Notes under the pieces: generated by a model
Told to the model about the DNA's origin: nothing
What the model saw: only the letters and a program-made list of their open reading frames with translations
Database searches by the model: none
NCBI RefSeq assembly: GCF_036321535.1
Contig: NC_087451.1
Location: 27,652,001 to 27,716,000 of the forward strand
Reading direction: 5' to 3'
Origin: Camelus dromedarius
Taxonomy: Eukaryota
DNA length: 64,000 bases
Part shown: piece by piece, positions 16,758-59,750 of the stretch
Layout: the number at the start of each line of letters is the position of its first letter
How positions within the stretch are numbered: the stretch's first letter is position 1
Program-made: the position numbers and the translations under genes

Positions 16758-17246
16758 GGGTGTCCACCCTCACTGGCAGCCTGTCCGAGTCACTAGCAAG
16801 TCCCACGTCCACGTGTTCTCCACGGCTTCTGGCTTCAGACGAGGCGGGAGCTGCTGATCCTCCAGGTTCTCCAGCTCCGAGGACTGGCCAGGTCCCAGCA
16901 CGCGCACCGCCCTTCCTCATTGTCCTCTCTCCCTGCTGCTGACAGCCTGGACACAGCAGATGGGGGGGGGGGTCACTGACAGGATGGGGGCCTGAGTGGG
17001 GAACCTGGGCAGGTGCCCTCCCCTTGCGCCTCCTGGGGCAGCTGAGAAGCACTTGGTCTTTGGGGAGCAGGTGCCAGGAAGAGCGGGACCGTTGCCCAAG
17101 CAGTTAGTCCATATGTACCCCGCAGACAAACGGAAGTGCGTGGTTCTGCACTGACATCAAAGTTCGTAAGTCACCTTCAAGCCATTTGATGTTCCTCCCA
17201 GAAGATGCTGCCCTGAACTGTAAGTTTGTCCCCACAAAGCAACGTC

Positions 17247-17252
17247 AATAAA
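17247..17252 (+). terminator. CENPX polyadenylation signal AATAAA
   Basis: First canonical hexamer after the CENPX stop, about 490 nt downstream. Confidence 0.75.
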
Positions 17253-18382
17253 TCAAAGCCACCTCCCCAGGCACAGCCTCCTGTTGCCATTAATCACCCC
17301 AAGTCGAGTTGCTTCACGTGTGAGCCTCCTGCCGTGCACGGGCCTGGCGCTCGCGCGGAGCCCCGCACGTGTGGCTGCTCGCCCGGGATGGTGCCTGTGC
17401 CACAGGACGGCTGTGGGTGTGGGGTGTTACTGCTGGCCGGCAGGCAGGCCCAGGAACAAGCGGGCAGGGCTGCTGGGGGTCACGCCCCTGGGAAGGACCC
17501 CTGGCCCAGGGCAACTCCAGGGCCAGGCAGGGTGACCCGGCCACGCTCACCTGGGACCTGCGAGAAGCCGGGTCTGCAAAGCCTGGCTGCCCTCTGGGAC
17601 CTCCTCCTGCTTGGCCAGGCCACCTGCACCCCACAGCATCCACCTCCCCTGAATTCTGAAAGCTGCTTGGATTCCTTGGAGCCCAGGAGGACCCAGCGAC
17701 CCCGGAGTCAGCGGACCTGGCGCACTGGGGAGGGACACTGGCTCCCCTGCAGCCACGGGCACCTGAGGAGCCACGTCCCCGCCCAAAGATGGCATGGTTG
17801 GCGGGGCAAGCCCTCCCTCCCTCATTTAGCCCTGCTGGCTTCCCCCTGCACCCCTTCCCCGCCTCTGCCCCCCACCTTCCTCTCCCCGCTCCCGGCAGGG
17901 AGTCTTGGGGCTTCAAAGCTCTGGGTGCATGTGGAAGTAATTAGACCTGAGGGGAGAGGCTGGAGACCAGTGCCAGAGCCTGTGCCCCCCGGACACTTTG
18001 AAGTGCACTCAGATGTGGGGCGGGCGGGGCATCAGGAAACCCCAGGCCAGCCCCGCCCTGCTGGGTGGGGGCTGCAGCCTCCCGGCTCCTGCCGCCTGCG
18101 GCACAGCCAAGGCAGGCCGTGCCTGGAGGTCCTTCTCCTGAGTTCTCAGAGCGTAATTAATGACGTCAGTTAGGTAAAAACTAAGGTTCACGGAGAACAC
18201 TTGTGCCCATTAAGAGACCAAGGCCCTAGCGAGGAGGCCCAGGGCCCGGCCCGGCCAGGATGTGGCCCATCCAGTCCGAGGGTCGGCTGGAGGCCCGTGG
18301 CTGGGAGGTGGGAGCAGGGCGGAGAATGAAAGGGCCCTCTCCAGGGAAGGAAGACAGGAGGGTCTCGAGAGAAGCTCGCAAC

Positions 18383-21400: not shown

Positions 21401-24400
21401 TGGGGCTCCTGGGCACTGCAGAAGGGGCTGGGAGGGGAACGGGTTGGGGGGCACCTTGCCCCCGCCGACCTAGACTCCTTTCCTAGGTGGGCTTCCAGCC
21501 TCTCTGCTGGTCTGGCCCCACCCCCCATCACAGTGGCTGCCCTGGGGAAGCAGACCCCCTCGCCCCAACTCAACCTCTGCAGGGCCACCGGTCACTTAAC
21601 AAAGACCAGCCTCTGTTACTAATTAAAATATCTAAAGAGACTCTGAAGAGGAAACCATTAGGCCAGAGGGCTGGGGAGGCCCCCCGGCTGCTCTCCCGGG
21701 GTGAAGGGACAGCACATTCCTTCAGCTCTGGACAGCAGCCCAGCAGGGCACCGGATCAACGCTCCGCACCCCGGAGCACTCGGGGCCTCCAGCCAGTGGG
21801 GAGGGCCGGCTTGGCATTCCCCACAGAGGCTGCGGGTCCGGGAGGAAAGGCGGGGCAGGGCAGCAGGCCTGGCAGCGTCCCCTCCAGCCTGGAGCCAAAC
21901 CTGCCCAGCAGCTGGCATACCAGGGCCCTCCTGGGCAGCCGGCCACCTGCAGTGAGGCCTCTGACCCTTGACCCTTCAGGGGCTCCCCTGGCCGCCTCAT
22001 GTGCCAGTCCCTTCTCACCCAGACCCCAGAGGCAGTCCTGGCTGTGGGCGCCAGCAGCCAGCCAGGCAGGCCCATCCTTGCCAGGACAGGAATAGCAAAG
22101 AAGGCTGGAAAGCCCCCAAACCACCCCAAAACCGACTTGAGAGGTGCCCTGCTCCCTGCAGTGCCCCCTCTAAAGGGCCTTCTCCCACTCCTGGGTGGCT
22201 GCCCCTCAAGCATCAGCCCCAGCAGCGCCCCAAGCCCAGCAGGCGGCCAGTACCTGAAACAAGGTCAGCATGTGGTCGTCCAGGATGGTTTTCGGAGGAG
22301 CAATGACTACGGACAGACAGGTGGACAGTTGTCTGTGTCAGGAAGCCCCCTGCCCCTGCCCCCACCCCCAGGGAAGACAGACCTGAGAGTGAGGAGGCCT
22401 GGGACCCATGGCCTCAGGGGAGGGGTTTCTGAAGAGCCCCATCAGCCCACAGCACCCTGCCCAACTGTCTGCGGCAGCAAAAACCCAGCGACAGGCTGGG
22501 GAGAGGGCCTGGGGCAGACCCACCTGCGGGGGAACCCTGCCCGCACTGTGCCCCATGCAGTCCTGTGGTGTGACCCCTCACCACCCAGACACCCACCGTG
22601 GGAGAGTGGGAGAGAGGGTCTAGGTAGGACGCAGGGGGCAGAGAGGCCAACCTCCCTCCCCGACCCTGGGTCCCCAGCATGGGACCCGCGTGCCCGGTGA
22701 CGCTGCTTCTTGGGAAAGGCTGCTTTGAGCCTGGGCTGGGAGGGGCGGGGGCTGCTGAGCAGGAGGGCCCAGAGACACGCTCACACAGGTGGAACGGCAG
22801 CTCGGGGTCACCCAGGTGGCTCCTCACGAAGTCCCGCAAGTCCCCCACTGAAGGAGGAAGCACGGAGTGAGTGGGGACCCCAAATTCAGACCAGCTCCAG
22901 GGCCAGGCCCCTCTGCACAGACCCCCATCCCCTACAGGCCCAGTAGTCTGACCCTGGAGGCATAGACCCTGATGCCCCCTCAGGCTGAATCCAAGCATGT
23001 TCCCGCCCGGCGCCCCCAGCAGCCAGGCCAGCGGGACATCCCTCCCTTTGCCCCTCTCCCTGCCCACCACCAGGGCCTGAGCTCTGCCCCAGGAAGGCCC
23101 CCCCAGGGACCTCGAGGGCCTGCCTGCTGCCCCTGCAGTCTTGGGTCCAGGTCACCAGGTACCCCGCTCAGAACGGTGGCATCGCTGCCGCGCCATGCCA
23201 AGAAACCACTGCTGGGTGTGGGGAGCTGTGGGCCCACCCTCTCTGGGCGCCCCCCTCCCACCCACGCCCCGGGCAGGCGGGTTCACGGAGGCACAGGCCC
23301 ACGGTCGCCGCCCAGCCGGCCTGCGCCTGCTGCCTGCCCCACAGAGACAACAGGGACCTGAAAGCAACCAGCCCCGGAGCCCGACGGCCGAGCAGCCACA
23401 GTCCCACAGCCCAGAGGGAAGGAGCCGGGAGGGGCTCACAGGGTCCCCACCTTCCCGGGCGCTCACCGGTCTCGCTGGGGCGGAAGCAGCCCTGCAGGAT
23501 ATGGCGGTCAGGAAACAGGACCCTCAGGACCACCTGGGCCGGGACAGGCGGCTTGTCAGCAGGCCAGCCAGAGCCCGGCTGCACAGGTGGGCCCACCACG
23601 AGGGGCCCCCCAACCCACACTGGGCCAGCCACCCCCTCACCTCGGCTGCCCCGGCCACGAGCTGCACAGGAAGACAAGCCAAGAACCCATGTTTTTCAAC
23701 TTAAGGTGGGGCTGACTGTTCTTCAGGAACCGTGAGTGTGCAGCCCTCAGCTGAGGCAGGGGACCGTGGCCAGCGGCGCTCGGGCAGCGGGAGCCGCAGG
23801 AGGCGCTGGAGCCGAGCCACGCGCAGACCCGCCCCCCGCGTACCTTGGGGTAGCGCTGCAGCTTCTCCTTCATCTGAGCCTCCCTGAAGGCCCTGGTCAC
23901 CAAGGGGGCTTCTTCCAGGCGCTTCCTGAGGGGAGGGGCGGGGTGAAGGCCCAGGCCTGTGCGGGCACAGCGGAGGCCCCACACCAGCTGGACTTTGAGA
24001 GCCGTTCCAGCACGCAGGGCCGGGTGGGAGCCCCTGCCCGGGCCCCGCCCCTCCCCAGAGCTGCCAGGGCGTGGGTGTTGGGGACCCAGACTTGGGCAGC
24101 AGGGAGCCTCCGGAGGGGCCAAGGCACACCCACCGCTCGCTCTTGAGCTGGGCCAAGCGTCTCCTGACGTCGTCCACGGTCACCTCGAAGAACTCGTCAG
24201 GCAGCTCCGAGGGCCAGGCCTGGAGCAGCACTTCCAGGTCGGGGTGGCACACCACGGGGTCTCGGTCCACTGGCTGGGCAGGCGGAGGGCTCGGCTGACA
24301 CAGGTGCCCAGGACGGGCCCAGGCCCTTACTCCACGGGACTGGGGTGCTGATGCAGACCCAGGCTGAGCCCAGGCCACGGCTGGCCCCATCTATGGGCCC

Positions 24401-27400
24401 AGGGCCAGGGCCAGGTCTCCAGGGTGGGATGTGGGATAACCGAGCCTGCCTGTCCAGCCACACCAATGCTGAGACCTTCACCCACCAGCAAGGCATGTGG
24501 TCCTGGGGTCTCGGCTAGGCTGGGCCAGCAGGTACCTCGTGACACCCTCGTGGCTGGGGTACTGGGCAGTGGGTGGGCGGCAGCTCGGCAGGGCCAGCCT
24601 CCCTTGGCAGCACCTCTGCTCACTTCCTGTCTCTGAGGGAAGCCCCCATGAGCCCCCGGGGGCTGCCCGCTATCAGGGTCCCCCAAAGCAGGGGACAAAC
24701 TTGGGGAGTAGCACCCTGGTCAAGGCCACGTCAGGGGCTCCATGGGAGGGGCGGGGAAGCAACAGCCCCCAAATTAGAGGTTTGGCAGAACCCTGCTAGC
24801 CGCTGGCCCCATGGTGAGGCTGACCCACCCCCTCCCTGGGGGAGCAGGCTGGCCCCACCCTCTGACCACCCTGGGGACACAGGAAGGGACAGCGTCCCTC
24901 CTAATTGGCAGCAACGGGGATGGAAATTACAAGGCAGGCTTGCCAGGCCTGCAGGGCCTCTGGGGGGCTAATTGCAGCGAGTGTCTCCTGCGCGACCACG
25001 GGGAGACCAGGCCTGATCAAGGCGTCCAGCAGGGCTGGCAGTCCTCCCTCCACAAAATGTCCATGAGCTTTCTGGGGTGAGGCCATGGTGCCTTCTGCTC
25101 ACTGCCCCGTCCCGGCCTCGGCAAGGAAATCCCGCCTCCCGCCTCTCGACACCCAGGGACGGCTCAGCAGGCTTCTCTGACCATCCCTTCCTCAGCCTGG
25201 ACGCAGCCCCACCTGTTCTAAAGGGATCCCATGCTGGTCGAGGGCAAAAGCTGCCCAGCAGTCAGGGGCTCACTCCCTCAGTGCACCTGCCAGGTGTCCC
25301 TGGGGCCACTCCCCCAGCCACACCGTCCAGGCCACCAGCTGCGCCACACCTCACGATGGAGGGAGGCGGGCTCTCGCCAGGACACCTCTCTGGTCTCAGG
25401 GCACTGGGGAAGGGTGGCCTGGAAGGGGTGGCTGAGGCCCGCGCAGCAGGGCCCGAAGGTGGCTGACAGAGGCCCTTGGGGGCTGCCCCCTCAGAGCCAC
25501 AATCCTCCTGCAGCCCACAGGCAGTCCACACCAGAGCTTTTTATAACAAGATGCCAGGAGCCAGGCTGCCCCCCACAGCCACGGCGCCTGCATTCCAGAG
25601 GGGCTGAGTGCTCGCTTGGGCTCCTCGGGGAGGACGAGGGCGGACGCGGGTGTGCCGAGCAGGGCACTGCCGTGCCCACGAGTGCCAGGCCCCGGGCCCT
25701 GGGGCACAAAGCCCACAGGCCAAGGCGCGGGCTCTGGGGCCGCCCTGTCCCCATCCCACCCCGGCAGCCCCGGGCACACTAGCCCCCCGGAGAACCCAGC
25801 ACTCAGGTGACATGCGCTCCATGGCACGAAGCTGAGCCTGACCATCCAGACACGGCCAGTAAAGCCCGTCCCTGAGAGAAGAAGGCCACTCCGGCCTCCT
25901 CGTCGTCCCAGTGCTGCAGTGCACAGCCGGTGGTGACCGGGGGGACTGCAGGCCGCTAGCACTGCCCACAACCCCCAGCCCACGGTCCGCTCCCCGAGGC
26001 CCCTTCCAGCACAGGTGACAACAGCCGTTAGCTTCAAGCTGTTCAGGGACCACTGACTTCCCATCAGAAAATAAACTGACAAAAATCTCTCTCTGTGTTG
26101 GCTCCAACCTCGATCCCACCCCTCCTCCAGGCCGCTGGTCTGCTCCAGAGGAGCCGGGAGCTGAAGGGGCTGCCTCGAGAAGCAGTCTCACACACTCACC
26201 TGCACCGCCCTGCACCCCAGGGGCCTCCCCGCTTCTGGGCAGAGAAGCCGGGGTTCCGAGCAGCCTCTGCTGCCCACCAGGGCCCAGACCACCCAAGTCC
26301 TAGAGCTGCCACCATGTCCGGCCCTGGGCAGGCCCTGTTCCACGAGAACAGATGGCCATCTGTGGCTGGGCCGGTAGGACGGTCACCCAGCTGTCAAAGG
26401 GAGAAGCCACGGGGCTTCACACGCCTCCACGTGGCCTGCGTAACAGAGACGTTTCCCTGCAGAGAGAAGAGGGGTGGGCCTGCAGCTCCGCGTGGGGGCG
26501 AGTGGGGCAGACGCTGTGCCGGGGGAGGCCGAGCCCAGGCCCTGCTCACTTCCGACGCCTGGCCAGCCACCTGGCCCCCATTCGCTATTGCCTCACCCGC
26601 TTCCCCTGGTCGCGGGCAGTTATCACGCATGGCTCCCATCCTAAGCGGGTTTACAGAGATGCTTGTCAACGGAGAACAGAGATCTAGGATGACACATCAC
26701 TAAGAAAGAAACACCCACATGGCGGCAACAGTCATTCACGTCTCTCCTCTCACCAACACCACGCCTCGGTGCCCTCACCATGGGGCGTGGGCTCCTGTGT
26801 GCTGGCCGAGGCCAGTCCCGGGGCCCAGGACGGGGCTCCAGGAGGAACGTCCCAGCTGGTGCCCAGGGACGCTTGTGGAGCGGCTGGCCTTCACAGCCCG
26901 CATCTCCAGGTCTGCTCTTCCAGAGGTGTCCAGGGAGCCACATGGAGGACGCACCCCCACCAAGAACTCGACATCACCAGGCCTGGGACATTCCAGCAAA
27001 CGCATGGGTTTCCCTCCTCACTGGCTCAAGGCTGGGCTCCTGAGCGCTGTCCATTCCAGAGACACAGCTCCAGCTCTGTCTTCCCGCCCAATCCTTTACC
27101 CCAGCAAAGTCAGAGGAGTCGTCCCTCCCCCAGTGGCCCAGATGCTGCTGTCAGCGAGAGAAGGGGCAGAATAGTGAGGATGCAGCCGGAGCCGGGGTCT
27201 GAGCCCACGGAGAGGCGTCTAAGTGACCGTGTTCAACGAGGGGGAACAGGCCTGGACGCCATCCTGCAGGGAGGAGGGGCTGGTCTGCAGGCTCCGAGCG
27301 GGGGGCCACAAGGGACCGGACCCCTCTGGCGAGAAGCCTGGCAGGGGCTCTCTCCCGCAAGCACACGACCCTGGCAAAGATTCCCAGGTGCCAGCTTCCC

Positions 27401-30400
27401 GCGAGGGTCTTACAGAGAAGAGGACACCCAGAAAACCAGACAGACTGGGATGGGTCAGACTGTCTGCTGGGCTGACACCCGCAAAGGGCCCAGAGGGCGC
27501 TTGGGAGGGACAGGGGCACCCTCTGCGGGGGGCGTCCAGAGGCCCAGGGCCGCTGATAGGTGGGGACCTGGTGACTGATGCCTCAGAGGAGCCCCGCCGC
27601 ACCAGGAAGACCCTTCAAGGGAGACCGCGGGGAGGGAGCTGTGACGCACTGCCCGCCCTCTGCCCTACGGAGGTCAGTGTGGCTCCAGGCATGGCCAGGG
27701 CCAGGCCCGGGGGGGACAGCCAGAGGACGTGCTCCAGCGGGGACCCACTTGGGCACATGGGGTCCCCTCATGTCAGAAGCGGCCTCCCTGCCGCTGCGGT
27801 TTCATCTTCTTGACGGTAATTTTCCAGGACATGATGACACACGGAGAAAAAATGTGAAAAATATGCGGAGGTGACCTCAACGCCAGATCTTCCAGCTGCC
27901 TCGTGAGGGCGCTTGTCTCCCTCCCGCCGGCCCACAGGCCTCCCTCTCAGCCCAGACTCTCCTCTGACAATGGTTTTTGGTAACAGGGAACATAAAGCCT
28001 CTTCCCTTGAGGCTTGGAGCTTAAATGAATCACTACTCCAGGGACGCGGGCCAAACCTCTGTCACTCCCAGAGCCAGCCGCCCTCTGGAAGGAGCGCCGA
28101 GCCAGCACGAGGCTGACTGACCGGACAGCCCTGCACCCTGAACCCGAGCGCCTGGCCCGCCCGCCCGCCCGCCCTGGGCTGGTGTCCACCCCCGGGCCCG
28201 CCCCTCCTCGAGCAGAAGAAACGAGGGGAGAGCTTTCCGGACCTGGAAAGGCTGGGCCAGGGTGGCACGCGGGTACCGTCTGAAGCGGGGCTGCTCCCAG
28301 GCACCTGGTGTGGCCAGGTGCACGTGTCCGGGCACAAGGTCCACAAACCCCCAAAGGACTGAAGAAGCAGGCGCGGGGCACGGTGGGGGAGGCTCTCCTC
28401 ACCCGCACGCCTGGCAGCTGCCCCCAGGGAGCCCAGGGAAGCTGGGCACTCAGGTCCGTGAGCCGCAGGGGGTGGATGCACACAGTGGACCAAAGGGCCA
28501 GGAGCAATCCCAACAGGGAGCCCTGTGCGCTGATCTGGACCGGGTAATGCAAACCGGGGGGTCCCGGGTGCCCACGCACCCACCGTCCACTATGGCTCGC
28601 AGGCTCGACACCCATCTCTCCCCGAGTCATCGTGACTGAGACCCGGCAGGACAGAGACAGCTGGAGGGGAACCTGCCTGTCACCGGGCTTCAAAAACTGC
28701 CTCAAGACTTGGCCGGGACCTTCAAAGCCAAGGACCTGTCTGCCAGCAAACCTCGGCGGGCATTCCAGTTGAGGCCAACACTGTTCTTCTCAGGACAGTT
28801 GGGCCCTTGGGCCGCCACCGGCGCCTGGGGGGCATCCACCCACAGGGCAGGGCCAGGCCCGCACCATGACCTGGGGCCACACATGGGGGACAGCGGGGTG
28901 CTCTTGAAAGGCACATCACAGACAGGCACCCCAGGCTCTAGCCAGGCTCCTCCCAGCCCTGTGTTCTAAACCTGCCCGTAAGTAAAGCAGGGAGCAGGAG
29001 GCAAGGCTGACACCTGCCTGAGGCGGGGTGCAAAGTGCCGGGCGAGACCCTGGGGCCGCGTCTCCAGCGGACGAGACCACCCCCTGGAAGGTGAGGGGCA
29101 GTCGGGGGGGGGGGGTGACCGCTGTCAGCGCCCGCCCTGCCCAGGGGGTCGGGGCCTTTGATCACAGACCCCTGTGCCAGCTGCGTGGGGGGACGCCTGC
29201 TGGGATCACACCGGCAGCACAAAGGGCTGCGGGGTGGCCTCCGGGGCCAGCAGGAGGACTTCAAAGGACAGGCCAGGGGCCGCTGGGCAGCCCAGCCTCT
29301 CCCCGCACCCGGCTCTGACGGCCAGTAAAACTACCTTCTAATAATTAACGTTCTGAGATCAAAGGCGGTAGCCGCCCGGGTCTGTAAACCATCCCGGGCC
29401 TCAACCGAGGACCTGCCTGCATTTTATCCTGTCTCTTCAGACTCTCTATTCAAATCCAAAACCACACACAGGCAAAACACTAATGGGGAACTTGGAAACT
29501 CTTTTTGATTACCAAAGTGTACCTTTGAAGTTCCCCCAAAAGTTCTGTTTTGTTCCCTTCTCCCCTCCCCCAGGACTTAAGGGGACACAAAGCAGACACC
29601 ATGTGGCTGGCCGGGCCCCCGGGTGTGCGGCTGTCAGTGACAGGAGGCGTGAGGCAGGCGGGCGGGGGACACTCCACAATCAACCAGCTGCTGGGGCTCC
29701 CAGATCAAAGACACGCACTGCTGGCGGCCAGGCGGACTGTCCCCAGGACCCCTCCTTCTTGGAGCCCCTGGGGTCAGTGCTCGGGGAGGCACTGGGACCC
29801 TGCCCCTGGACAGTAACCACGTCCCGGGCCAGCACCAGCCCCCCAGACACCAGCAGGTTCCCAAGAGACACAGAGACCTGCAGCCTTCAGGGTGGGAGAA
29901 AGTGACAGCCAGCCCTGGCACCAGATTTCTGGCCCCCAAACCCTGGGGCCTCCAGAGAGAGCAGGTCCGGTGGGAGTCAGGCCCCAACCACAAGTGTTCG
30001 CTTCTGATGGCTGATCTCAGGGTCCAGGCTGTGAGACAGGGGACTTCATGCTGTTTCTAATGGGGTCCAAACACCAGCGTAGAAGCTACTGGGTCCCCAG
30101 AGGGCCAGAGCACTACCACTGCCACCTCCCCAGGATGCACGCCTGTCAGGGGGACTGCCTGGGTCCCCCACCCCTCCCCTGTCCATTCAGCAAGAACACA
30201 CAAAGGGGGGCTCAGGGAACAGGAGTGGTCCCCGCGCCTGCCCCTTGGCAGGGGTCCAGGCTCTGTCCCACGGCCGAGCCCCCCCCTCAACTAGGCCCTG
30301 CAGGCACAGGTGCCCAACCCTCCCCCATCCCCAGGGGTGTGACCTGGAGGCAAGAGTGAGGAGGGGGCCCCAGAGGAGACAGGATGCAGGCGGCGAGCTC

Positions 30401-33400
30401 CAGAACTAAAACGTTAGTTAACCACAACCAGCAGTGTTGCTAACACCGTCACTGAAACGGGATGGATACCCGGAAGGCAAGGATGGCTTTATGGGGGTAA
30501 CTGACCCAGGACCTCACCACACAATCAAACTGAAGGAGGAAGAACACATGGGGTCATCTCGATGTGGAAAAAACAGCTCATAAAGCTTTATAGCCCGCTT
30601 ACGATAAAGAAAAATTCTCAGGACACTAAGAATAGGAACTCCTGACTTGATAAAGGCTTTTCCACAGCACACATCATCCTTCAGGCAAACTACTGCCTCC
30701 AACGTCACGGTCAAGGTCAAGCAGGGAAGCCCACTGAACTGGCTGCCAGTCAACAGACACCAGAGGCCCAGCCACTGCGACATGACAAGAAAACACTTGA
30801 GAGAAGGAGGAGCATCAAGACAAAAAACAAAACTGACATGATTTGCAGAGACTCCAAGTGAAGCCAAGCACTGCCGGAACCAGTGAAGCAACAAGCCCAC
30901 AGCCTTCCAGCCCCCAGCGCCTCCTCAGGGGCCGAGCCCAGGAGGTGGGCAGCCCAGAGCTGGGGAATCCACATACCTCTACTGGCAGCAGGGTCTGTGA
31001 GCACTGTGCAGTGAGCGGTCACATGGAGGGACCCCAGAAGGCAGTGGAAGCTCAGTCGTATGACTTGTGACAGCCCTACTGAAGAAGGTCCTGCACCAGC
31101 ATCCAGCTGGAAAACTGACCCCACAGGGGCTCAGGCCTGTCCCCTAGCTTAGATGCTCCGACAGGGCTGCAACTGGTCAGGGCAGCCTGACCCACCAGAC
31201 CGGCACCATCAGATGGAGGGGTGGAAGACACTGGTGCGATGCCAAGAGCCACCTGCAGAAGTGTCGCCCACCTGGGGGGGGGGCCCTTGCTCGAGGGGCC
31301 ACTCTCTGACCCGTCACTGCCTGCTCAGTGTGACCCAAATTGCAGGACGCCTTCCACCGCTCATGTCTGTTGGGGTCAGAGCAGTGGACAGGGGTGGGCA
31401 TCACTGTGGGGGAGGGGGTGGGACAGGGACGGCTGGAGCCCGAGGCACTCAAGGACAGACTCAGCATCGAAGACAACGTGCTGCTGGCAAAACCTGCCCA
31501 ACACTGCACTGGTGGTGGTGTCTACACAGTAAGTTACACCTCAACAGAGCTAACCACACAGGGAAGACGTCAAAGCGGCAGCCCAGGGCCCAGGCCAGTT
31601 CATCCCAGCTCAGGGAGAGCTGCAGCCCTCCTCCCAGCTGCGGCTCAGGGTGGCCAGGCACTCCCACGCCCCAGTCCCTGCCGGAGACGCCCAAGGCCCC
31701 ACCCACAACGCCTGTGAAGGGTGAGCAAACTCGCCCTCTCCCGCCTGTTCAGGGAGCGCCCCACACGCCCACGGGCTGGTGGCAGAGACAGCAGGGGAGC
31801 TGGGGGGATGCCCGGCTCAGGGGTAAGCGTGTGTGGGACAGTCAAGGCCAAACCTCCTTCACGTCAAAAGCCAGCCAAAACCAGCAGCCAGGCAGAAAGT
31901 GGCAGTGCCAGGAGGCGGGTTCTCCGGCTGTGACGTGGCTATGGGGACACACAGGTTTGCCAAAACCTACCCACCTGTATTTCTAAAACGATGACTCAAC
32001 GAAGCTGATCTCAGACCAAACAAAACCCCAAGAGCACTCCCTGGAGACAATGACAACGCGCCCAGCAACCCTGCTGTACCCCAGGCTGACCGGCCGGAGG
32101 TCAGGACACAGAGAAAGGACCCCGGCACCCAGCACGCCCTTACCGGCTCCGGCTCCGGCTCCGGCTCCGGCTGGGGCTCCTGGCCAGGCCTCGACTTCTT
32201 CGGCTTGGAGGGGCCCGCAGGGCTGGAGAAGGACTTTGGCAATTTGGCTGAAGATGACGTCAGAGGCCTCGCGGACCCGGAGGGGCCCCCCAGCCGCTGT
32301 CCTCCACCCGAGAAAGGAACAAAAGGGGCAGGCGAGGGCTCCTTCAGGATCTGCTCTGTCTGAGCGTCTGCGAGGCCGGCCCCCAGGCTGGCTGTCTCGT
32401 CCTGACGGCTCACATCGCCCCGGCTGAGCCCCGCTGAGTTCAAAGGAAGCCGAGGGCCGCTGGCGGCCGGCTCGGCCGCCGTGGATGGCATCAGGCTTCC
32501 CGGGCTTTTGCTCCAGGAGGGCCCAGGCTCCTGCTTGCCGGCAGAGTCACATCGCTTCATGGCAAACCTGCAGGGGGAGGCCCGGAGAGCAAGTGAAACT
32601 CCACACTCAGCCCCTGCCCCCGGACTCCGGCATTGTGCCCTCTGGTGACAGCCACACCGAATCCAGTCCCGTGGATGCTCGACTCCCCACGGCCCCATCC
32701 CGTCCACTGCTCCTGGGGACAGGAGCACATACGGGGCCCCCACGCAGCCCTGTCCACCCTGCAGCCAGCAGACTCCTGACCGGACACACCGCGCCCCACG
32801 GCGCCCAGCCTCCCAGGCTGCTGGCGGGAGAAGCCACTGGGCAGGGCAGCTGGGCGTTCCCATGTTTGCTGTTCCCTGTCCTCAGAGACCCCAGCTCTCT
32901 TTACCAAACCAGACTCAGACGCCCCCACCTGATGATGGCACTGCCCCCGGTGATGCCCAGCGACTGCAGTGTTGTGCTCTGCAGGGCAGCCCTGCCAGTC
33001 ACCTGTTGGGAGGGAAGGACATCCCGCTGACCCCTCCCTAAGCGCCCTCCACCTGCCAAGCCCACCACGCACCACCTGCCTCCACCCGGGCACTGTGTCA
33101 TGGGTACCACAGGGTCCCCCAAAGGCATGGGTCCAGCCCCTGCACCCTAATCTACACCCACGTGTTTGTCAGCTGGCCCGCATCGGTCCCCCCACCCCAC
33201 CCCATGTGAGGGCTTGGCAGGCAGAGCTCGGGCCAGGTGAGCCACATCTGGACCGCGCACCAGCCCTCTGAGGGCTGGGACTGACCACGATGGCCCCAAT
33301 CCAGGCCCAGATGCCGGAGGCACGGTGGTCTGTCTCCTCCGGCGGAGGGAGGGCTCGTGCCCCAGACGCCTCCCACTCACAGCCCTGAAACCCCTGTCCC

Positions 33401-42400: not shown

Positions 42401-45400
42401 TGTGTCCCTGTCCCGCAGGTATCAGCTGCTGCGTGGGGACCTGGCAGCTCTGAGCTTCCAATGAATGAGGAAGAGGCCCACACGGGCCTGCAGCCTCTTC
42501 TGATCCTCACGCACAGAGCTCCCGGGTCCACAGCGGGACAGTATCCTGGGAGGAAGTGGGGGGAGCAAAGTGAACTGGTGAGTCAGGAAGGGGAATAACC
42601 AAGGCCAGGAGAAGAGGGCGGGTGGAGAATCCAGGGACCTCAAGACACCTGCTGTCTCTATTGGCAGCTTGCCCTCCTGGGAAGTGAGGCCAGGATCATG
42701 GTCAGCACGTGTCACAAACAGGAAACTTAGATGAGAAGTGCCGACAGGTGGCCCTGGCCACCCAAAGGCAGCGCTGGGACCATGTGCAGCTCCTAATGTC
42801 CAGCTCAGATCACATCTCGTCTGTGGACAGACAAGGAGTCCGACACCTCCTTGGGAAAGAGGAAAGAGAGGAGAGCGTGGGGGCCTCGGAGACCCGGACC
42901 CAGACTCACACCCGTGGGCAGGGAGGGTGGCGGCCAGGCAGCTAGAGCCTGCCTGACCCTGGGCCCTCTCCTCACGACCCCCTTAGCTCCCAGGAACCCT
43001 ACAGGAACGAGAACCACCACTGTTAACCCTCACATCACTTGAGTCTGAGAAAAGCTCGCGCCCACAGCAGAAGACACTACTGCCGTGCGGCCTTGACTTT
43101 GGAGGAGACAGACAGTGGCCAGAATGAATCACCAGGAGAGTGAATAAAAGAAATTTTTCACACCTCGCAAAAGTCAGGCTCTGAGCTCTATTTTTACTGA
43201 AGTTTAGGGAAAAAACTACAATGCTGGCGAGAGAATGTGAGATCTGAACACACACAAAGTGGTCACTGGACTGCATGAATGCCAAGGTGCCTGTGCAAAC
43301 ACCGGTTTTCTGAGCAGAACAGTTCGCGAAGCCTGGGGCGTCTGGAAGACCTGGGAAACGAACAACTTTGATACCCATCTTCAACAACTTCAACGCTGAG
43401 TGCAAGACAGAACAGCAGACCTAAGGAGACCCTGACGGCAGTGGGCTGGGAAGCTCTAGAGGCGACGGGAAGGGGTCTCGTGCACCAGCGCACACACACA
43501 TGTGCGAGGGACTGCCTTCCTCAGCAGTGGCCATGGCTTTTTAAACAAATTACACGGTCAGTGGATAAAACGGAGATAGGAGAAAAACTGATACGTGTGT
43601 GAAAGAGACTCAACATTCCGACTAGCTCCCGCCAGACACCATGCAGAGGCCTCAGGTAGATTCAGGGAAAGCAGAGAGGGTGTGCGGCTCTGTGACAGGG
43701 CCCCAGGGGGATGGCCCAACATGGCCCTGGGATTCTCAGTGGCTAGCCATAAGGCAGGGATCCTGGATGACGTGAGGGCATGTTCACTCAGAACCCCACT
43801 CTGGAGAGCCCCACACAAGAGGCAGCACGGGCGGGCCTAACAGAGTAGGCCCTCCTACCTTGGGAGGACAGCCACACCTTGAAGGACATACTGCTAAACT
43901 ACAACTCCAGGGGCTGTAAGGCCATCAGAACCACCTACAGTTTGCAAGTTTCTTCCCATTTCTGTGACCACGGCCTCTTGCCCTCAGAGCCCCACCAGGA
44001 ACTTACACAACCTAATGCTCGAAAACCCACTGGCAGTGGGTGGAATAGTGGCCCCCAAAAACATACATCCACATCCTAGCCCCCAGGACTCACGAACGTG
44101 ACTTCATTTGGAAACAAGGCCTTTGCAAATGTGATAAAGGATCTCGAGGTGAGGTCATCCTGGATTATCTGGTAGGCCTTAAATCCAAAGACAAATGTCC
44201 CTACAAAGGACGGAAGAGGAGAAACACAATACACAGGGAGCAGGGAGGCAGAGACAGGAAGGAGGTGACCATAAGCCCAGGGAGGCCTGGGCCCCCAGAA
44301 GTTGGAAGGGACAAGACATGGTCCTGCCCTTGAACTCTGGAGGGAGTGTGGCCCTGCCAACACCTTTGTGAGGGGCTTCTGGGCTCCAGATGGTGAGAGA
44401 AAAAACTTGTGTTGGTTTAAGCCCCAGCGGGACCCTGGGGGAGGAGCGGATGGACTTGGACCCTGTAGCCACCCAGAGCACACTCACTTCAGGTCATATT
44501 CGTTGGGGTTGAAGTCCTGCCGCCGGCACGTGTCCTCCAGGACCTATGGGTGAGATGAGGGCATGAGCCACTGGTCTAGCCTGGTCACCTCCCCCGACCA
44601 GTGCGGTGGCGCAGTCAAGTGGCACTGAAGCAGCTGAGGGCACAGAGTCCACCTCCTGGAAAGCTGGTTGGCTCTGCCGGACAAAGCCTAGTACAAGCCA
44701 CGTGACTGACTATCCACCCAAAAGCTTCACACGCCTCCCCTGCAAATCCTGCTCACGCAGGTCCTCATGCACCTGTCTTGTCATCCCAGCTCGGCGGGAC
44801 CCTCCACAGCCGGTCCCAAGGCCACAGACTATCTTCCCACACACCCCAGGAGGTCCCCTCCCCATTCTCAGAAACCCAGTCCCAGTGGGCCCTGGAGAGC
44901 CCTCCTGGGCAGGACCTCCCCCCTTCCGGGCTCTGCATGCACTGAGCTATTCTACATCGGCTCAGGACCCCCGCCCCACCTAGTGTGCGCACCGTCCCCT
45001 ACACAGCTGGGCCCAATGAGCATTTTCAATGACGTAGGCCAGCTGCCGGGTGCAGTGCAGCGAGTGACTCAGCACACCCGGCCACAGCGCCCCGGGCGGG
45101 AGGGCGCCCCTGGAGGCTGGCTCAGGGGGCCGCGGAATCGGGTGGCGGTGGCAGGGAGCGCGACCCCCGCCAGCCTCTTAGGGCGGCACGCCTGCCCCCT
45201 CCCCGCAGCGACCCGGAGCCCCGCGCCCGGCGCGGAAGTGGGCGGACCCGCCGAGCCAGGAGGCCGCTCGTTGGCTGCCGCAGGCCCCGCCCCACAGGTC
45301 CGCCCGGCCCCGCCCCGCAGGCCCCCGGAGCAACCGCAGGAGCGGCCCGCGCCGCGTCCCCGCCGCCCAGTCCCCGCCCGCCGCCCGCCCGCGGCCGCAC

Positions 45401-45502
45401 CTGCAGCAGCACGGTGCTCGGCGTCACCTTCACGGTGTGCCGCCGCCCGTTCGGAGCCAGCACCGACACCGCGGAGCCCCCGCCGCCTGCCGGGGCCGCC
45501 AT
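18451..45502 (-). CDS. ASPSCR1: Tether containing UBX domain for GLUT4 (TUG/ASPL/UBXD9), p97 adaptor, 551 aa, 16 exons
   Basis: Exons 45401-45502, 44488-44543, 41790-41904, 40078-40178, 33980-34037, 32929-33002, 32144-32567, 24134-24273, 23844-23925, 23467-23533, 22785-22847, 22254-22306, 19124-19175, 18806-18875, 18547-18731, 18451-18464 sum to 1656 nt. MAAPAGGGGSAVSVLAPNGRRHTVKVTPSTVLLQ..., LGITGG|SAI (TUGUL cleavage context), PFVPFSGGGQRLGG (SHP-like box), ELPDEFFE, UBX region LRVLFPDRHILQG...FIAPPKT, ending ...KVPKWLKLPAGKR*. Confidence 0.97.
30410..30880 (+). mobile_element. Ancient LINE-1 ORF2 (reverse transcriptase region) fragment in ASPSCR1 intron 7
   Basis: A-rich; GGAAGGCAAGGATGG, AACACATGGGGTCATCTC, CTGACTTGATAAAGGC, CACAGCACACATCAT, CAAGCAGGGAAGCCCACT and TTTGCAGAGAC follow the order of L1 RT-domain segments. 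No open frame. Boundaries approximate. Confidence 0.7.
32143..32172 (-). repeat. Coding hexanucleotide microsatellite (CCGGCT)5 at the 3' end of ASPSCR1 exon 7
   Basis: Five perfect CCGGCT copies; the minus strand encodes QPEPEPEPEP right up to the GTAAG donor. Confidence 0.95.
39565..39660 (+). mobile_element. MIR SINE fragment
   Basis: CACATTAACTCATCTCATCTTCAC...GAGGCCCAGAGAGGGCAAGCAACTTGCCCACGGCCACACAGC matches the MIR core with an internal deletion. Confidence 0.65.
40590..40810. repeat. Degenerate GC-rich minisatellite (GGCCCCGCCCAC-like units) in ASPSCR1 intron 3
   Basis: Repeated GCCCCACCCCACCGGCCA(A/C)GGCCCC and GGCCCCGCCC units; C-rich on +, G-rich on the ASPSCR1 sense strand. Confidence 0.8.
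44031..44425 (+). mobile_element. MLT1-family (ERVL-MaLR) solo LTR in ASPSCR1 intron 2
   Basis: Starts TGGCAGTGGGTGGAATAGTGGCCCCCAAAA; contains GTGACTTCATTTGGAAACAAGGCCTTTGCAAATGTGAT, GAGGTCATCCTGGATT, GGAGTGTGGCCCTGCCAACACCTT and GTGTTGGTTTAAGCC, all hallmark MLT1 segments. Confidence 0.85.
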
Positions 45503-47614: not shown

Positions 47615-48175
47615 CTGCATGTTAACATTCACAGCAGCTTCATCTAATAGTCAAAGGCTGGAATGAAGCCAGATGTCCTTCATCGGGTGAGCAGTTAAAG
47701 GATGTGGCGCATCCACACATGGAACACCACTCGGCAATCAAAGGAACAAACTGCTGACACTGCAGCCTGGGTGAGTCTCCCGGGAAACTGGGTGAGTGAA
47801 AAGAGCCGGTCCCTAAAGGCTACATGCTGTGTGACTCTCTTTATATAACATGGAAATGACAGCATTTTAGAAATCGAGGACACAGTAAGAGTTGCCAGAC
47901 ATTAGGGGAGGCGGGGTTATGGGAGAGCAGCGCCAGGGACCTACACTGGATAAGACTGGATACAGCATGATATGCATGTGAAGGAACATGGGTGCAATGT
48001 ATTCAGGGCACTATCCCGGTTGGGATTTTGTGCTAGTTTTGCGAAATGTTACCATTGCAAGAAAGTACATAAATACAGGAGGGCTTGCTCTCTGCTATTT
48101 CTTATAACTGCATGTACCTCTACAGTCATCTCAATAAAACTCTCAAAAAACGTCAAAGCCCCAAAAAGCTAAAAA
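47615..48175 (+). mobile_element. Old LINE-1 3' end (L1M-type)
   Basis: TTCACAGCAGCTTCATCTAATAGTCAAAGGCTGGAA...GATGTCCTTCATCGGGTGAG...CATCCACACATGGAACACCACTCGGCAATCAAAGGAAC...CTACATGCTGTGTGACTCTCTTTATATAACAT, ending in AATAAAACTCTCAAAAAAA. Confidence 0.75.
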
Positions 48176-48189
48176 TTTAATACGATAAA

Positions 48190-57099: not shown

Positions 57100-59750
57100 A
57101 CGCGGGGAGGATCCAGGACCCCACCCCGAGGCCCACCGACCTCAGTAGGTGGCAGCGCCCCGTCTGCCCCCGCTGCCTCGGAGGGCCGCTCAGATTCTGT
57201 CCACCCAGGCGCGGGACAGGGCGACTCCCCCGTGGCGCCGTGCCGCGGCGCCCGGTTCCTCCCGCAGGTCGCCGAGGGCGCCGGGGCCTCGCGCCACACC
57301 TGTCCGCTCCTTCGGGAGGCCCCGGCGCCGCTGCTGCCGGCCCCTCGGCGCGGAGCCCTGTGTCCGCCGTCGCTTTGATCCCGGGGGCCCCGCTGGATAA
57401 AAGTCCCGGGCGGCTCTGCGCCAGCGCCAGAGGGGAGGCAGCCGAGCCGGGCGTACCAGCGGGCTGGCGCTGGGCGAGCGACGCCGAGGAGTCGGGGCCG
57501 CGGGGCGGCCCGCGCCGGCCGCGGTGAGCGCGGGGCTCCGGGACGGTTCGGGGTGGGGGCTGCGGCCCGGGGTTCCGGTCGCCCGCGGGCTGCTCTGGCC
57601 CTGGGCGGAGGGGGGCGAGGGGGACCCCGGCGGCTCAGGTGAACGCGCCCCCTGAGTCCCCGGCTCGACGGGCTCGGCCGGCTGCGTGGCGGACGGAGCT
57701 CCCCCCGCGCGGAAAAGCCCCGCTCCTTCCCCGGCGGCCCCCGCCCGCCTCCCCCCGCCTCCCCTTCCAGCCGCCCGGGGGCGGGGGCGGCGGCGCCGGG
57801 CTGGCCGCGGTGAATGAGCCGCCGGGGCCNNNNNNNNNNNNNNNNNNNNNNNNNNNNNNNNNNNNNNNNNNNNNNNNNNNNNNNNNNNNNNNNNNNNNNN
57901 NNNNNNNNNNNNNNNNNNNNNNNNNNNNNNNNNNNNNNNNNNNNNNNNNNNNNNNNNNNNNNNNNNNNNNNNNNNNNNNNNNNNNNNNNNNNNNNNNNNN
58001 NNNNNNNNNNNNNNNNNNNNNNNNNNNNNNNNNNNNNNNNNNNNNNNNNNNNNNNNNNNAGGCTCGGCCCCCGCCGCTCATTGGCGCGGGTCGGAGCCAG
58101 CGCACCCAGACCTTGCGCTGCCCTCGGCCGGCTGCGCGCGGAGCCCGAGCTGCCCAGGCCGACGGCGCCCGGCCCCGAGAGCCTCGACGCCAAGCCGCTC
58201 GCGCCTCCTCGGCCAGGCCCAGTGCGGGGAGCGGTGCGAGCGAGCAGGCGCGCCTGGCGCCCCGCGGCCCGGGCACCCCCGGCCCGGCGTCCCCGCCCCC
58301 GCGCCGCCTCAAGGCCGCCCGCTCTCCGCAGGTGGCCGCGGGCCCGAGCGGCGCGGCCATGGGCCGAGGGGTGCGCGTGCTGCTGCTGCTGGGCCTGCTG
58401 CACTGGGCCGGGGGCGGCGAGGGCAGGAAGACCTGGCGGCGCCGTGGCCAGCAGCAGCCCCCGCCGCCGCCGCCCCCGCCCCGGGCCGAGGCGGCGCCGG
58501 CGGCCGGACAGCCGGTGGAGAGCTTCCCGCTGGACTTCACGGCCGTGGAGGGCAACATGGACAGCTTCATGGCGCAGGTCAAGAGCCTGGCGCAGTCCCT
58601 GTACCCCTGCTCAGCGCAGCAGCTCAACGAGGACCTGCGTCTGCACCTCCTGCTCAACACGTCGGTGACATGCAACGACGGCAGCCCCGCCGGGTAAGGT
58701 CCGCAACCGCCCGCGCGACCGGCGCGCCCCTGCCGGTGGCCCCGGGGCCGCGGGCCGTCTTGTCGCCAGTGGGGTCGCACCACCGCCTCCCTGTTTCCGC
58801 CCAGACGCACGGAGTCTCTGCGCTGGACCCTCCTTGCTGGCCTCAGCGGTGCTCGCCCCGGGGAGAGGGCTCCCGTCGAGCCTCGGAGGCGCTGGCCCCG
58901 GAGAGGGCCCGGCTCGGCGACCCGCCGCGCGGGGGGTGGGGCAGCGATTGAAGCCCTGGTACCAGGCCAGCCCGGGCACTGACCCCTCGGCCACCGGTGC
59001 CCAGCCCCTGTGCTCGCGTCCTTCGGTCCCTGGGCGGGGAGATGGCGGTCCGAGAGTGGCCCTGGCTCCAGCAGGAGGAGGCGACACAGCGGGGCGGGGA
59101 GAGTCCTCCCCCGTACTCCCACCCCCACCCCAGCTCGACTCGCCCCGTCTGCTGCCTGCGGCTGCCTGGACTGCCAGGGATCCCAGCCAGCCGGAGAGAC
59201 AGGCAGGGGGCGCAGGTGGGACGGAAGAACCTGGGGTGCGGCATTCGCCCATCTCCAGCCCGAAGTAGATGAAGGAAGGATACGAGGCTGGGGGTTGGGG
59301 AGGAGTTGGGGGCACCCATGCCCTCAGCGACTCCACAACACGAGGAACACAAAGTTAGAGCGGGCCTCGGTAGGACGGCTGCGACCCGCCTCTGTGGCGC
59401 CCGCGCCCCTCCACGCCCGCCTGTCCGACCCCAGTGCCTCTGCCCCACGCACACTCTTCCAGCGAGGGTGCTTTGCACTCTCCAAGCGCCACTGCGAGTC
59501 CCAAGGAGAATCCCCAGCCCCAGTGAAGAACCCCCTCCCCCGCGCCGGGCCTCGGGCGCCGAAGTTACAGCGCGTCCCGCGCGGGGCGGGCCGTGGGGAT
59601 TTTCCACGGACCACACAGCCCCTCGCCGCCCTTCCCCGCCCCGCGAGCGCCATCTCCCGGGACTGGCCGATGCTGGCCGGGCCGAGCGCGCTCTGCGGGG
59701 GCCTGGCCGCTGGCGCCCCCGTGCGGCGCGGGCGCTCGGCGACAGGTGGA
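57100..59750 (+). promoter_or_regulatory. Large NOTUM CpG island (promoter, exon 1, part of intron 1)
   Basis: About 2.6 kb of dense CpG flanking the NOTUM ATG; TCF site CTTTGATC at 57373-57380. Confidence 0.85.
57830..58059. other. Assembly gap (230 N)
   Basis: Run of N inside the NOTUM CpG island, about 300 bp upstream of the ATG. Confidence 1.

What the first reader, a model, noticed from the sequence alone, without database searches (positions are those of the whole stretch)
28720..29710. Dense TCF/LEF site cluster in ASPSCR1 intron 7: candidate long-range Wnt enhancer for NOTUM
Seen in sequence: six CTTTGA[A/T]-core sites in about 1 kb, five of them within 560 bp: CTTCAAAG 28720-28727, CCTTTGATC 29155-29163, CTTCAAAGG 29259-29267, AGATCAAAGG 29356-29365, CCTTTGAAG 29522-29530 and AGATCAAAG 29702-29710, plus a variant CACAAAGGG at 29218-29226. 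The 29356 site is the optimal TOPflash-type TCF site and is followed by GCGG and GCCGCC (29371-29376), which match the C-clamp 'helper' motif. A TAATTAA homeobox palindrome lies at about 29342. My rough manual count finds only about 20 such cores in the whole 64 kb, so the local density is many times background. Established: NOTUM is a direct Wnt/beta-catenin feedback target, and homotypic TCF clusters with helper sites are characteristic of Wnt-responsive elements. Inference: this enhancer acts on NOTUM about 29 kb away, from inside a housekeeping gene. In human, intron 7 is also the ASPSCR1-TFE3 translocation breakpoint intron.
Basis: partly seen in the sequence, partly recalled or inferred. 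Interest (0 to 1): 0.78.

Follow-up and report, generated by a model that had tools for sequence, protein, structure and literature searches.

The report
Ancient TCF-site enhancer inside ASPSCR1
A 570-base stretch inside an intron of the housekeeping gene ASPSCR1 carries five binding motifs for the Wnt-pathway factor TCF/LEF; four have stayed unchanged from camel to mouse to sea cow and keep the motif in a turtle, so it is very probably a real Wnt-responsive enhancer, with the neighbouring Wnt-inhibitor gene NOTUM as its most likely but untested target.

Summary
All six CTTTGAW cores and the variant sit at the stated coordinates. There are 24 cores in the 64 kb window. A local dinucleotide shuffle expects 0.2 in this kilobase, and 6 are seen.

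The gene assignment is also right. The site lies in ASPSCR1 intron 7 (minus strand) of a Camelus genome, and NOTUM exon 1 lies about 29 kb away on the plus strand.

Orthologous ASPSCR1 loci from seven other placentals and a sea turtle add the main new evidence:
- Window 29150-29715 is the best-conserved non-coding block of the gene. Mouse is 82% identical over 491 bp, about the same as exon 8.
- The block sits in the same intron in the turtle (E about 1e-46).
- Four of the five TCF cores are invariant in eight placentals. Three are identical in the turtle, and the fourth switches TTCAAAGG to ATCAAAGG, which keeps the motif.
- Only 6 of 469 7-mers are invariant in all nine species, and three of them are TCF cores (P about 8e-6).

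The 28720 site and the CACAAAGGG variant are not conserved. The helper-site claim stays inconclusive.

The element is not coding and matches no Rfam family. No paper in the library describes the element. It is a new member of a known kind.

The parts
29150..29715 (.). Conserved non-coding element (candidate Wnt-responsive enhancer) in ASPSCR1 intron 7
   Evidence: It is the best-conserved non-exonic block of the gene. Mus caroli is 82% identical over 491 bp, the bat 82% over 643 bp and the dugong 74% over 456 bp. The deer is 90% and the fox 86% identical over about 650-670 bp. The turtle matches at L008:56034-56465 with 65-69% identity and E down to 1.7e-46, in the same intron. All six frames contain stops and indels are mostly not multiples of 3. 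No Rfam family matches.
29155..29163 (+). TCF/LEF site s1, CCTTTGATC (matches SSTTTGWWS)
   Evidence: Found. The core is kept in 6 of 8 placentals; the deer has CTTTTGATC and the dugong CCTTTGACC. This flank does not align in the turtle.
29259..29267 (-). TCF/LEF site s2, CCTTTGAAG on the minus strand (CTTCAAAGG on plus)
   Evidence: All 9 columns are invariant in 8 placentals. The TTCAAAG core is identical in the turtle.
29357..29365 (-). TCF/LEF site s3, CCTTTGATC on the minus strand (GATCAAAGG on plus)
   Evidence: ATCAAAGGC is invariant in 8 placentals. ATCAAAG is identical in the turtle. The G at 29357 is camel-specific; the other species have C.
29522..29530 (+). TCF/LEF site s4, CCTTTGAAG
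   Evidence: CCTTTGAAGTT is invariant in 8 placentals. The turtle has CCTTTGATG, so the W position switched while the motif was kept.
29702..29710 (-). TCF/LEF site s5, AGATCAAAG on plus
   Evidence: ATCAAAG is invariant in all nine species. The base 3' of the core on the plus strand is G, giving the full CCTTTGATS consensus on the minus strand, in fox, mouse, rhino, dugong, bat and turtle. It is A in camel, deer and pig.
29371..29376 (+). Helper-like GCCGCC, 6 bp 3' of s3
   Evidence: RCCGCC is retained in 7 of 8 placentals but not in rhino or turtle. Local background is 2.4 per kb, so its presence alone is not significant.
29339..29348 (.). Homeobox-type TAATAATTAA
   Evidence: AATAATTA is kept in 7 of 8 placentals and in the turtle; it is lost in the warthog.
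29460..29467 (+). RUNX-like core AACCACAC
   Evidence: Invariant in 8 placentals. The turtle has AGCCACAC. The factor assignment is an inference from the consensus.
29582..29592 (+). GGGACACAAAG, a SOX- or TCF-like ACAAAG core
   Evidence: GGGACACAAA is invariant in 8 placentals. The turtle has GGGACAAAAAG.
29600..29607 (.). CATGTGGC E-box-like footprint
   Evidence: TGTGGC is invariant in nine species.
29685..29690 (.). CAGCTG E-box
   Evidence: Kept in 7 of 8 placentals. The dugong has CAGCCG and the turtle CAGCAG.
28720..28727 (-).
   Evidence: Kept only in deer and rhino. It is changed in the warthog (CTTCAGAG) and fox (CTTCGGAG), and the region does not align in mouse or dugong.
29218..29226 (+). 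Variant CACAAAGGG; not conserved
   Evidence: Only 1 of 9 columns is invariant. CACAAAG is present only in camel, deer and warthog.
32183..32572 (-). ASPSCR1 exon 7, the 5' boundary of intron 7
   Evidence: tblastn of the dromedary protein P0081, residues 168-310, gives 99.3% identity.
24133..24279 (-). ASPSCR1 exon 8, the 3' boundary of intron 7
   Evidence: tblastn. Its translation found ASPSCR1 proteins.
45398..45469 (-). ASPSCR1 exon 1 coding part; the promoter region lies between the element and NOTUM
   Evidence: tblastn shows 100% identity for residues 12-35.
58371..58679 (+). NOTUM exon 1 (signal peptide region), the proposed target gene
   Evidence: Found by the GC3-GC2 coding screen, with further NOTUM-like exons between 59927 and 63147. 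The assignment to NOTUM rests on my reading of these translated exons and on the expected gene order, not on a database search. The N run at 57830-58059 just upstream was left untouched.

Best explanation
Window 29150-29715 is an ancient cis-regulatory element, at least amniote-wide, in intron 7 of ASPSCR1. Its conserved core grammar is four to five high-affinity TCF/LEF sites (WTCAAAGG), spaced about 100-180 bp apart. Homeobox, RUNX-like, SOX-like and E-box footprints lie between them.

The most likely mechanism has three steps:
1. TCF/LEF proteins occupy the sites.
2. When Wnt signalling stabilises beta-catenin, the element switches from TLE-mediated repression to activation.
3. It loops to a promoter in the neighbourhood.

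The best candidate target is NOTUM, whose exon 1 lies about 29 kb away on the other strand. NOTUM is a well-established Wnt/beta-catenin feedback inhibitor. ASPSCR1 would then be a bystander host gene.

Shown here:
- motif clustering
- deep conservation specific to the motifs
- non-coding nature of the element
- fixed position in the intron

Inferred:
- TCF occupancy
- Wnt responsiveness
- NOTUM as the target
For: **Cluster statistics**
- Six cores are seen against 0.2 expected from local shuffles.
- The cluster is in the top 0.7% of comparable motifs.
- Four sites match the published high-affinity HMG consensus SSTTTGWWS (consensus quoted from PMC4140642).

**Conservation of the block**
- It is the strongest non-exonic match of the whole gene to mouse, dugong and turtle.
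- It lies between exons 7 and 8 in the turtle as well.

**Footprints**
- Four of the seven invariant runs of 7 bp or more across 8 placentals are the TCF sites.
- Three of five WTCAAAGG 8-mers are invariant, against 2.2% of all 8-mers in the block (P about 4e-5).
- In nine amniotes only 6 of 469 7-mers are invariant, and three of them are TCF cores (P about 8e-6).
- Site s4 switches TTCAAAGG to ATCAAAGG in the turtle. This points to constraint on the motif rather than on the exact sequence.
- As a control, other CTTTGAW cores in the gene are mostly not kept in mouse or dugong.

**Other readings excluded**
- The block is not coding and matches no Rfam RNA family.

**NOTUM as a Wnt target**
Against:
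- The ASPSCR1 promoter lies between the element and NOTUM, so the enhancer would have to skip it.
- In the turtle the element is 46 kb from the ASPSCR1 start, and no NOTUM gene lies within the next 10 kb. Linkage to NOTUM outside this window was therefore not shown.
- WTCAAAG also fits the loose SOX consensus.
- The flank of s2 (CAAAGGACA) resembles a nuclear-receptor half site.
- The helper site is not statistically supported.
- No paper in the library links this intron to NOTUM.
Confidence: 0.58

Rival explanations
1. The element is a genuine TCF-dependent enhancer or silencer, but its target is not NOTUM. It would act on its host gene ASPSCR1 or on another neighbour such as CENPX, LRRC45, RAC3 or DCXR.
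For: - It lies inside ASPSCR1, about 16 kb from that gene's promoter, which is nearer than NOTUM.
- ASPSCR1-CENPX linkage is conserved in the turtle, deer and warthog loci.
- A second conserved block with TCF motifs lies just past the ASPSCR1 stop codon.
- No NOTUM gene lies within 10 kb upstream of turtle ASPSCR1.
Against: - To my knowledge, none of these genes is a recognised Wnt/beta-catenin target, whereas NOTUM is.
- Developmental-type conserved elements with homeobox, RUNX and E-box grammar are unusual for housekeeping genes. This is an inference.
Confidence: 0.2
2. The element is a conserved enhancer, but its CAAAG cores are read by factors other than beta-catenin/TCF. Candidates are SOX proteins, HNF4 or other nuclear receptors, or TCF1/LEF1 acting without Wnt (for example with RUNX in lymphoid cells).
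For: - WTCAAAG fits the loose SOX consensus WWCAAWG.
- A conserved ACAAAG core (29585-29592) and an invariant RUNX-like AACCACA sit in the element.
- The s2 flank CAAAGGACA resembles a DR1 half site.
- SOX9 peaks are reported near NOTUM in HT-29 cells (PMC9771724).
Against: - All five cores have T immediately 5' of CAAAG, and in most species G 3' of it (WTCAAAGG). That is the TCF-preferred form; SOX prefers ACAAAG or ACAATG (own knowledge of the consensus motifs).
- The only change at s4 in 320 million years toggles between the two best TCF variants.
- Only s2 has a half-site-like flank.
Confidence: 0.15
3. The conservation reflects an unannotated exon or a structured non-coding RNA rather than an enhancer.
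For: - An alternative exon exists elsewhere in the same intron (26981-26871, dromedary isoform P0006).
- No RNA data could be examined.
Against: - There are 4-7 stop codons in every frame.
- Most indels among species are not multiples of 3.
- There is no Rfam match with E below 0.4.
- The invariant runs are 6-11 bp islands that match transcription-factor motifs, not a continuous exon or hairpin.
Confidence: 0.03
4. The cluster is a chance event of no function, picked out after the fact by the reader.
For: - The motif was chosen after reading the sequence.
- About 1% of comparable motifs show an equally dense cluster somewhere in the window.
Against: Independent evidence, not used in choosing the motif, shows that exactly these cores are the most conserved positions of an element retained since the amniote ancestor.
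Confidence: 0.02

Closest known systems
Vertebrate Wnt-feedback WREs with multiple TCF sites (AXIN2 intron 1, SP5 promoter, NKD1 intron); named from my own knowledge, not checked here
   Same: Both are homotypic clusters of high-affinity TCF/LEF sites within a few hundred bp, conserved across mammals, next to a negative-feedback gene of the pathway.
   Different: Those elements lie in or beside their own target gene. This one sits 29 kb away inside a different gene, with that gene's promoter in between. Its activity is untested.
Drosophila Notum and nkd W-CRMs with HMG-Helper site pairs (bipartite TCF/Pangolin recognition; PMC4140642 and the work it cites)
   Same: The target gene family (Notum) is the same. 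The element has classic HMG sites matching SSTTTGWWS and one adjacent GCCGCC that matches the Helper consensus GCCGCCR.
   Different: There is no sequence homology. Only one of the five sites has a helper-like motif. That motif is not kept in rhino or turtle and is not above background. In vertebrates only some TCF isoforms carry a C-clamp.
Long-range enhancers housed in bystander genes, such as the SHH ZRS in LMBR1 intron 5 and the MYC-335 WRE; named from my own knowledge
   Same: A deeply conserved non-coding element sits at a fixed position in an intron of an unrelated, broadly expressed gene. MYC-335 is also TCF-dependent.
   Different: Target contact is proven for those elements and not for this one. 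The distance here is much shorter (29 kb). Conserved linkage to NOTUM beyond this window was not tested.

Membership tests
Wnt-responsive element (WRE / W-CRM) | Cluster of HMG-domain sites matching the TCF consensus SSTTTGWW(S) | tested here: met
   Four full 9-mer matches lie in 376 bp and five CTTTGAW cores in 555 bp. Local shuffles expect 0.17-0.2.
Wnt-responsive element (WRE / W-CRM) | The TCF sites themselves are under purifying selection | tested here: met
   Four of five cores are invariant in 8 placentals. Three are identical and one keeps the motif in the turtle. P is about 4e-5 and 8e-6 against the element's own background.
Wnt-responsive element (WRE / W-CRM) | Helper (C-clamp) site GCCGCCR close to an HMG site | tested here: inconclusive
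   GCCGCC lies at 29371-29376, 6 bp from s3, and is kept in 7 of 8 placentals. It is absent in rhino and turtle, and the local background is 2.4 per kb. This feature is not obligatory for vertebrate WREs.
Wnt-responsive element (WRE / W-CRM) | Occupancy by TCF/LEF and beta-catenin in Wnt-active cells | not testable with these tools
No paper in the library reports a peak here.
Wnt-responsive element (WRE / W-CRM) | Wnt- and TCF-site-dependent transcriptional activity | not testable with these tools
   This needs a reporter or genome-editing experiment.
Bystander-gene enhancer (genomic regulatory block) serving NOTUM | The non-coding element is kept at the same position in the host gene over long evolutionary time | tested here: met
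   The element lies between exons 7 and 8 in the camel, seven other placentals and the turtle.
Bystander-gene enhancer (genomic regulatory block) serving NOTUM | Conserved linkage of host gene and target gene, and physical or functional contact with the target promoter | not tested
   NOTUM-ASPSCR1 adjacency is seen only in this window. The fetched loci carried 1-10 kb flanks without NOTUM.
Protein-coding exon or structured RNA | An open frame with indels that preserve it, or a match to an RNA family | tested here: not met
   Stops occur in all six frames and indels are mostly not multiples of 3. The best Rfam match has E 0.4 and 13 bits.

The most novel reading that the evidence does not exclude
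The intron-7 element, together with a second amniote-conserved block bearing TCF motifs just 3' of ASPSCR1 (17905-18015), forms a Wnt-feedback control region for NOTUM at least 320 million years old, embedded in and around a bystander gene. This would explain the retained NOTUM-ASPSCR1-CENPX gene order. Because the element lies in the intron where human ASPSCR1-TFE3 translocations break, each translocation would do one of two things depending on the breakpoint. It would either strip one NOTUM allele of its Wnt enhancer or place a Wnt-responsive enhancer inside the fusion oncogene.
Probability: 0.25. Interest if true: 0.7.

Novelty: new member of a known kind. Interest (0 to 1): 0.58.

Why it matters
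NOTUM is the secreted enzyme that switches Wnt ligands off. It is a feedback target with roles in gut stem-cell competition, liver zonation, bone and placenta. The DNA element that couples NOTUM to beta-catenin/TCF in vertebrates is not described in the searchable literature.

This work gives a compact, sharply defined candidate: about 570 bp, with four invariant TCF sites and the exact bases to mutate. The element has been conserved since the amniote ancestor, so it can be tested directly in human or mouse cells.

If NOTUM is confirmed as the target, ASPSCR1 would be a bystander host gene. The position of the element in the translocation-breakpoint intron would then deserve a look in ASPSCR1-TFE3 tumours.

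If the target is instead ASPSCR1 (TUG, a GLUT4 tether), that would be an unexpected link between Wnt signalling and glucose-transporter trafficking.

Tried and rejected
- **Repeats as the source of the sites:** none found.
- **Coding exon:** rejected by stops in all frames and by indels that break any frame.
- **Known RNA family:** no match.
- **Loci that could not be fetched:** donkey and alpaca isoforms are not on record. The tarsier file is too large. The opossum gene range is too long. No primate or marsupial was therefore compared.
- **Metagenome scan:** an exact-pattern scan built from the invariant cores found nothing.
- **Literature:** six searches combined NOTUM, ASPSCR1, TCF, enhancer and ChIP-seq terms. 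Eight papers were read. None describes an ASPSCR1-intronic element or any distal NOTUM enhancer. The reported regulators (GCM1, RUNX2) were mapped to the NOTUM promoter.
- **Helper site as independent support:** rejected as not significant.
- **Sites 28720 and 29218 as part of the element:** rejected as not conserved.
Full report
**1. The observation**

Cores start at 28721, 29156, 29260, 29358, 29523 and 29704. The variant CACAAAGGG is at 29218-29226, TAATAATTAA at 29339-29348, and GCCGCC at 29371-29376.

The window holds 24 cores, against 9.2 expected from whole-window shuffles. Several tests address whether the cluster exceeds chance:
- Uniform placement of 24 sites gives 6 in 1 kb with p about 0.0006.
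- Dinucleotide-preserving shuffles of the kilobase itself expect 0.20 cores, and none of 2000 reached 6.
- Because the motif was chosen after reading, I ran a look-elsewhere control over all '6 bases plus one two-fold degenerate base' motifs of similar abundance. Of 2980 non-repetitive ones, 0.7% show an equally dense cluster. Among the 178 AT-rich ones, only CTTTGAW does.
- Four of the sites match the published high-affinity HMG consensus SSTTTGWWS (consensus from PMC4140642).
- No direct, inverted or tandem repeat generates the sites.

**2. Where it is**

A GC3-minus-GC2 screen of stop-to-stop frames gives this gene order:

| Gene | Strand | Window position |
|---|---|---|
| DCXR-like | + | 1-1034 |
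| RAC3 | - | 2.9-4.3 kb |
| LRRC45 | - | 6.3-12.9 kb |
| CENPX | + | 15.9-16.7 kb |
| ASPSCR1 | - | see below |
| NOTUM | + | exon 1 at 58371-58679 |

I named these genes by reading the translated exons and the expected gene order. Only ASPSCR1 was then confirmed by database search. One ASPSCR1 exon (24127-24270) was searched against the representative library. A full-length hit was then used to collect named orthologues, annotated 'tether containing UBX domain for GLUT4'.

tblastn of these proteins on the window maps 15 coding exons. Exon 7 is 142/143 residues identical to the dromedary protein, against 138/143 for Bactrian camel and 123/130 for alpaca.

The element is about 29 kb from NOTUM exon 1. 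The ASPSCR1 first exon and promoter (about 45.4-46 kb) lie in between.

**3. Conservation**

ASPSCR1 loci, introns included, were fetched for these species:

| Locus | Species |
|---|---|
| L001 | Cervus canadensis (deer) |
| L002 | Phacochoerus africanus (warthog) |
| L003 | Vulpes lagopus (fox) |
| L004 | Mus caroli (mouse) |
| L005 | Ceratotherium simum (rhino) |
| L006 | Dugong dugon (dugong) |
| L007 | Phyllostomus discolor (bat) |
| L008 | Lepidochelys kempii (sea turtle) |

blastn of intron 7 shows that 29108-29737 is the outstanding block. Mouse is 82% identical over 491 bp. For comparison, mouse is 83% identical in exon 8 and 70% in exon 7. The bat is 82% and the dugong 74% identical. 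Re-extracting the block alone gives 90% for the deer and 86% for the fox.

Across the whole gene, this block gives the strongest non-exonic match to mouse, dugong and turtle. In the turtle it lies at L008:56034-56465 (65-69% identity, E down to 1.7e-46), between turtle exon 7 (51794-52243) and exon 8 (60238-60384). That is the same intron.

**4. Footprints**

In the eight-placental MAFFT alignment, only 2.2% of 8-mers in 29150-29715 are fully invariant. Seven invariant runs of 7 bp or more exist:
- CTTCAAAGG (TCF site)
- ATCAAAGGC (TCF site)
- CCTTTGAAGTT (TCF site)
- ATCAAAG (TCF site)
- ACCATCC
- AACCACAC (RUNX-like)
- GGGACACAAA (SOX- or TCF-like)

Three of the five WTCAAAGG 8-mers are invariant (P about 4e-5 by resampling). 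Site s1 keeps its core in 6 of 8 species.

Adding the turtle, only 6 of 469 7-mers are invariant in nine species. Three of them are the cores of s2, s3 and s5 (binomial P about 8e-6). Site s4 is CCTTTGAA in placentals and CCTTTGAT in the turtle, a change that toggles between the two preferred TCF variants.

As a control, most other CTTTGAW cores in the gene are not kept in mouse or dugong. The selective constraint therefore falls on the TCF motifs themselves.

**5. What it is not**

The block has 4-7 stops in every frame, and most indels among species are not multiples of three. No Rfam family matches; the best has E 0.4.

**6. Helper site**

GCCGCC lies 6 bp from s3 and fits the Helper consensus GCCGCCR. 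It is retained as RCCGCC in 7 of 8 placentals. It is missing in rhino and turtle. The neighbouring GCGG is camel-specific. RCCGCC occurs 2.4 times per kb locally. This claim is plausible but not supported beyond chance.

**7. Mechanism and target**

The anatomy matches a Wnt-responsive element: several high-affinity, conserved TCF sites with co-factor footprints between them (homeobox, RUNX-like, ACAAAG, CATGTG and CAGCTG E-boxes).

NOTUM is listed as a canonical Wnt target in PMC13273282. PMC9771724 places it among the top five high-confidence Wnt targets in HT-29 cells and reports SOX9 peaks near its promoter and gene body.

That the element drives NOTUM is an inference from proximity and biology. 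The element would have to bypass the ASPSCR1 promoter. Linkage to NOTUM in other species was also not examined, because the fetched flanks were too short and the look-ups were exhausted.

**8. Literature**

Six searches and eight papers read found no description of this element or of any distal NOTUM enhancer in vertebrates. GCM1 and RUNX2 binding were reported only at the NOTUM promoter. Genome-wide ChIP or cCRE catalogues may well contain the human orthologue, and that could not be checked here.

**9. Verdict**

- The interpretation as a conserved TCF-site enhancer is strongly supported by evidence independent of the motif choice.
- Wnt responsiveness is probable.
- NOTUM as the target is the leading but untested hypothesis.
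- It is a new member of a known kind (a WRE). Interest is moderate to good because it is sharply defined, ancient and directly testable.

Noticed in passing
window 17905-18015: A second amniote-conserved non-coding block lies about 400 bp past the ASPSCR1 stop codon and aligns to turtle L008:103657-103782. It holds two TCF cores. GCTTCAAAGC at 17911-17919 is CATCAAAGC in the turtle and is lost in the rhino. CACTTTGAAGTGC is kept in deer, warthog, rhino, bat and turtle and is lost in the fox. It also holds a near-invariant CATGTGGAAGTAATTAGACCTGA, conserved in 6 of the 7 aligned species. This is the same vocabulary as the intron-7 element, so it may be a second WRE or a 3'UTR element.
   Followed up: partly
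window 33495-33976: A placental-conserved intronic block lies next to ASPSCR1 exon 5 (mouse 77% over 572 bp including the exon). It holds GCTTTGAAG at 33860-33868, kept in 7 of 8 placentals, an invariant GAAAACAAACAGGGC, and a TTTCCAGnnTGGAAAG palindrome. The intronic part has no turtle match.
   Followed up: partly
window 17148-17316: A block between the 3' ends of CENPX and ASPSCR1 is conserved to the turtle (73% over 172 bp). Its two CTTTGAW cores (17156, 17252) are not consistently kept, so the conservation probably has another cause, such as a UTR.
   Followed up: partly
window 26871-26981 (minus strand): An alternative coding exon inside intron 7 is used by a predicted dromedary ASPSCR1 isoform (P0006), which skips exon 7. 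It is 100% identical to the window.
   Followed up: no
window 27745-28100, 25420-25700 and 24700-24950: Three further intron-7 blocks are conserved across placentals. For example, 27741-28160 is 83% identical to deer, and 27741-28098 is 81% identical to rhino. None contains a CTTTGAW core.
   Followed up: no
window 57830-58059: A 230-base N run lies immediately upstream of NOTUM exon 1, so part of the NOTUM promoter is unreadable.
   Followed up: no
window 48000-50000: An AT-rich stretch (GC 0.45, against about 0.63 elsewhere) lies in the ASPSCR1-NOTUM intergenic region and may be an inserted repeat.
   Followed up: no
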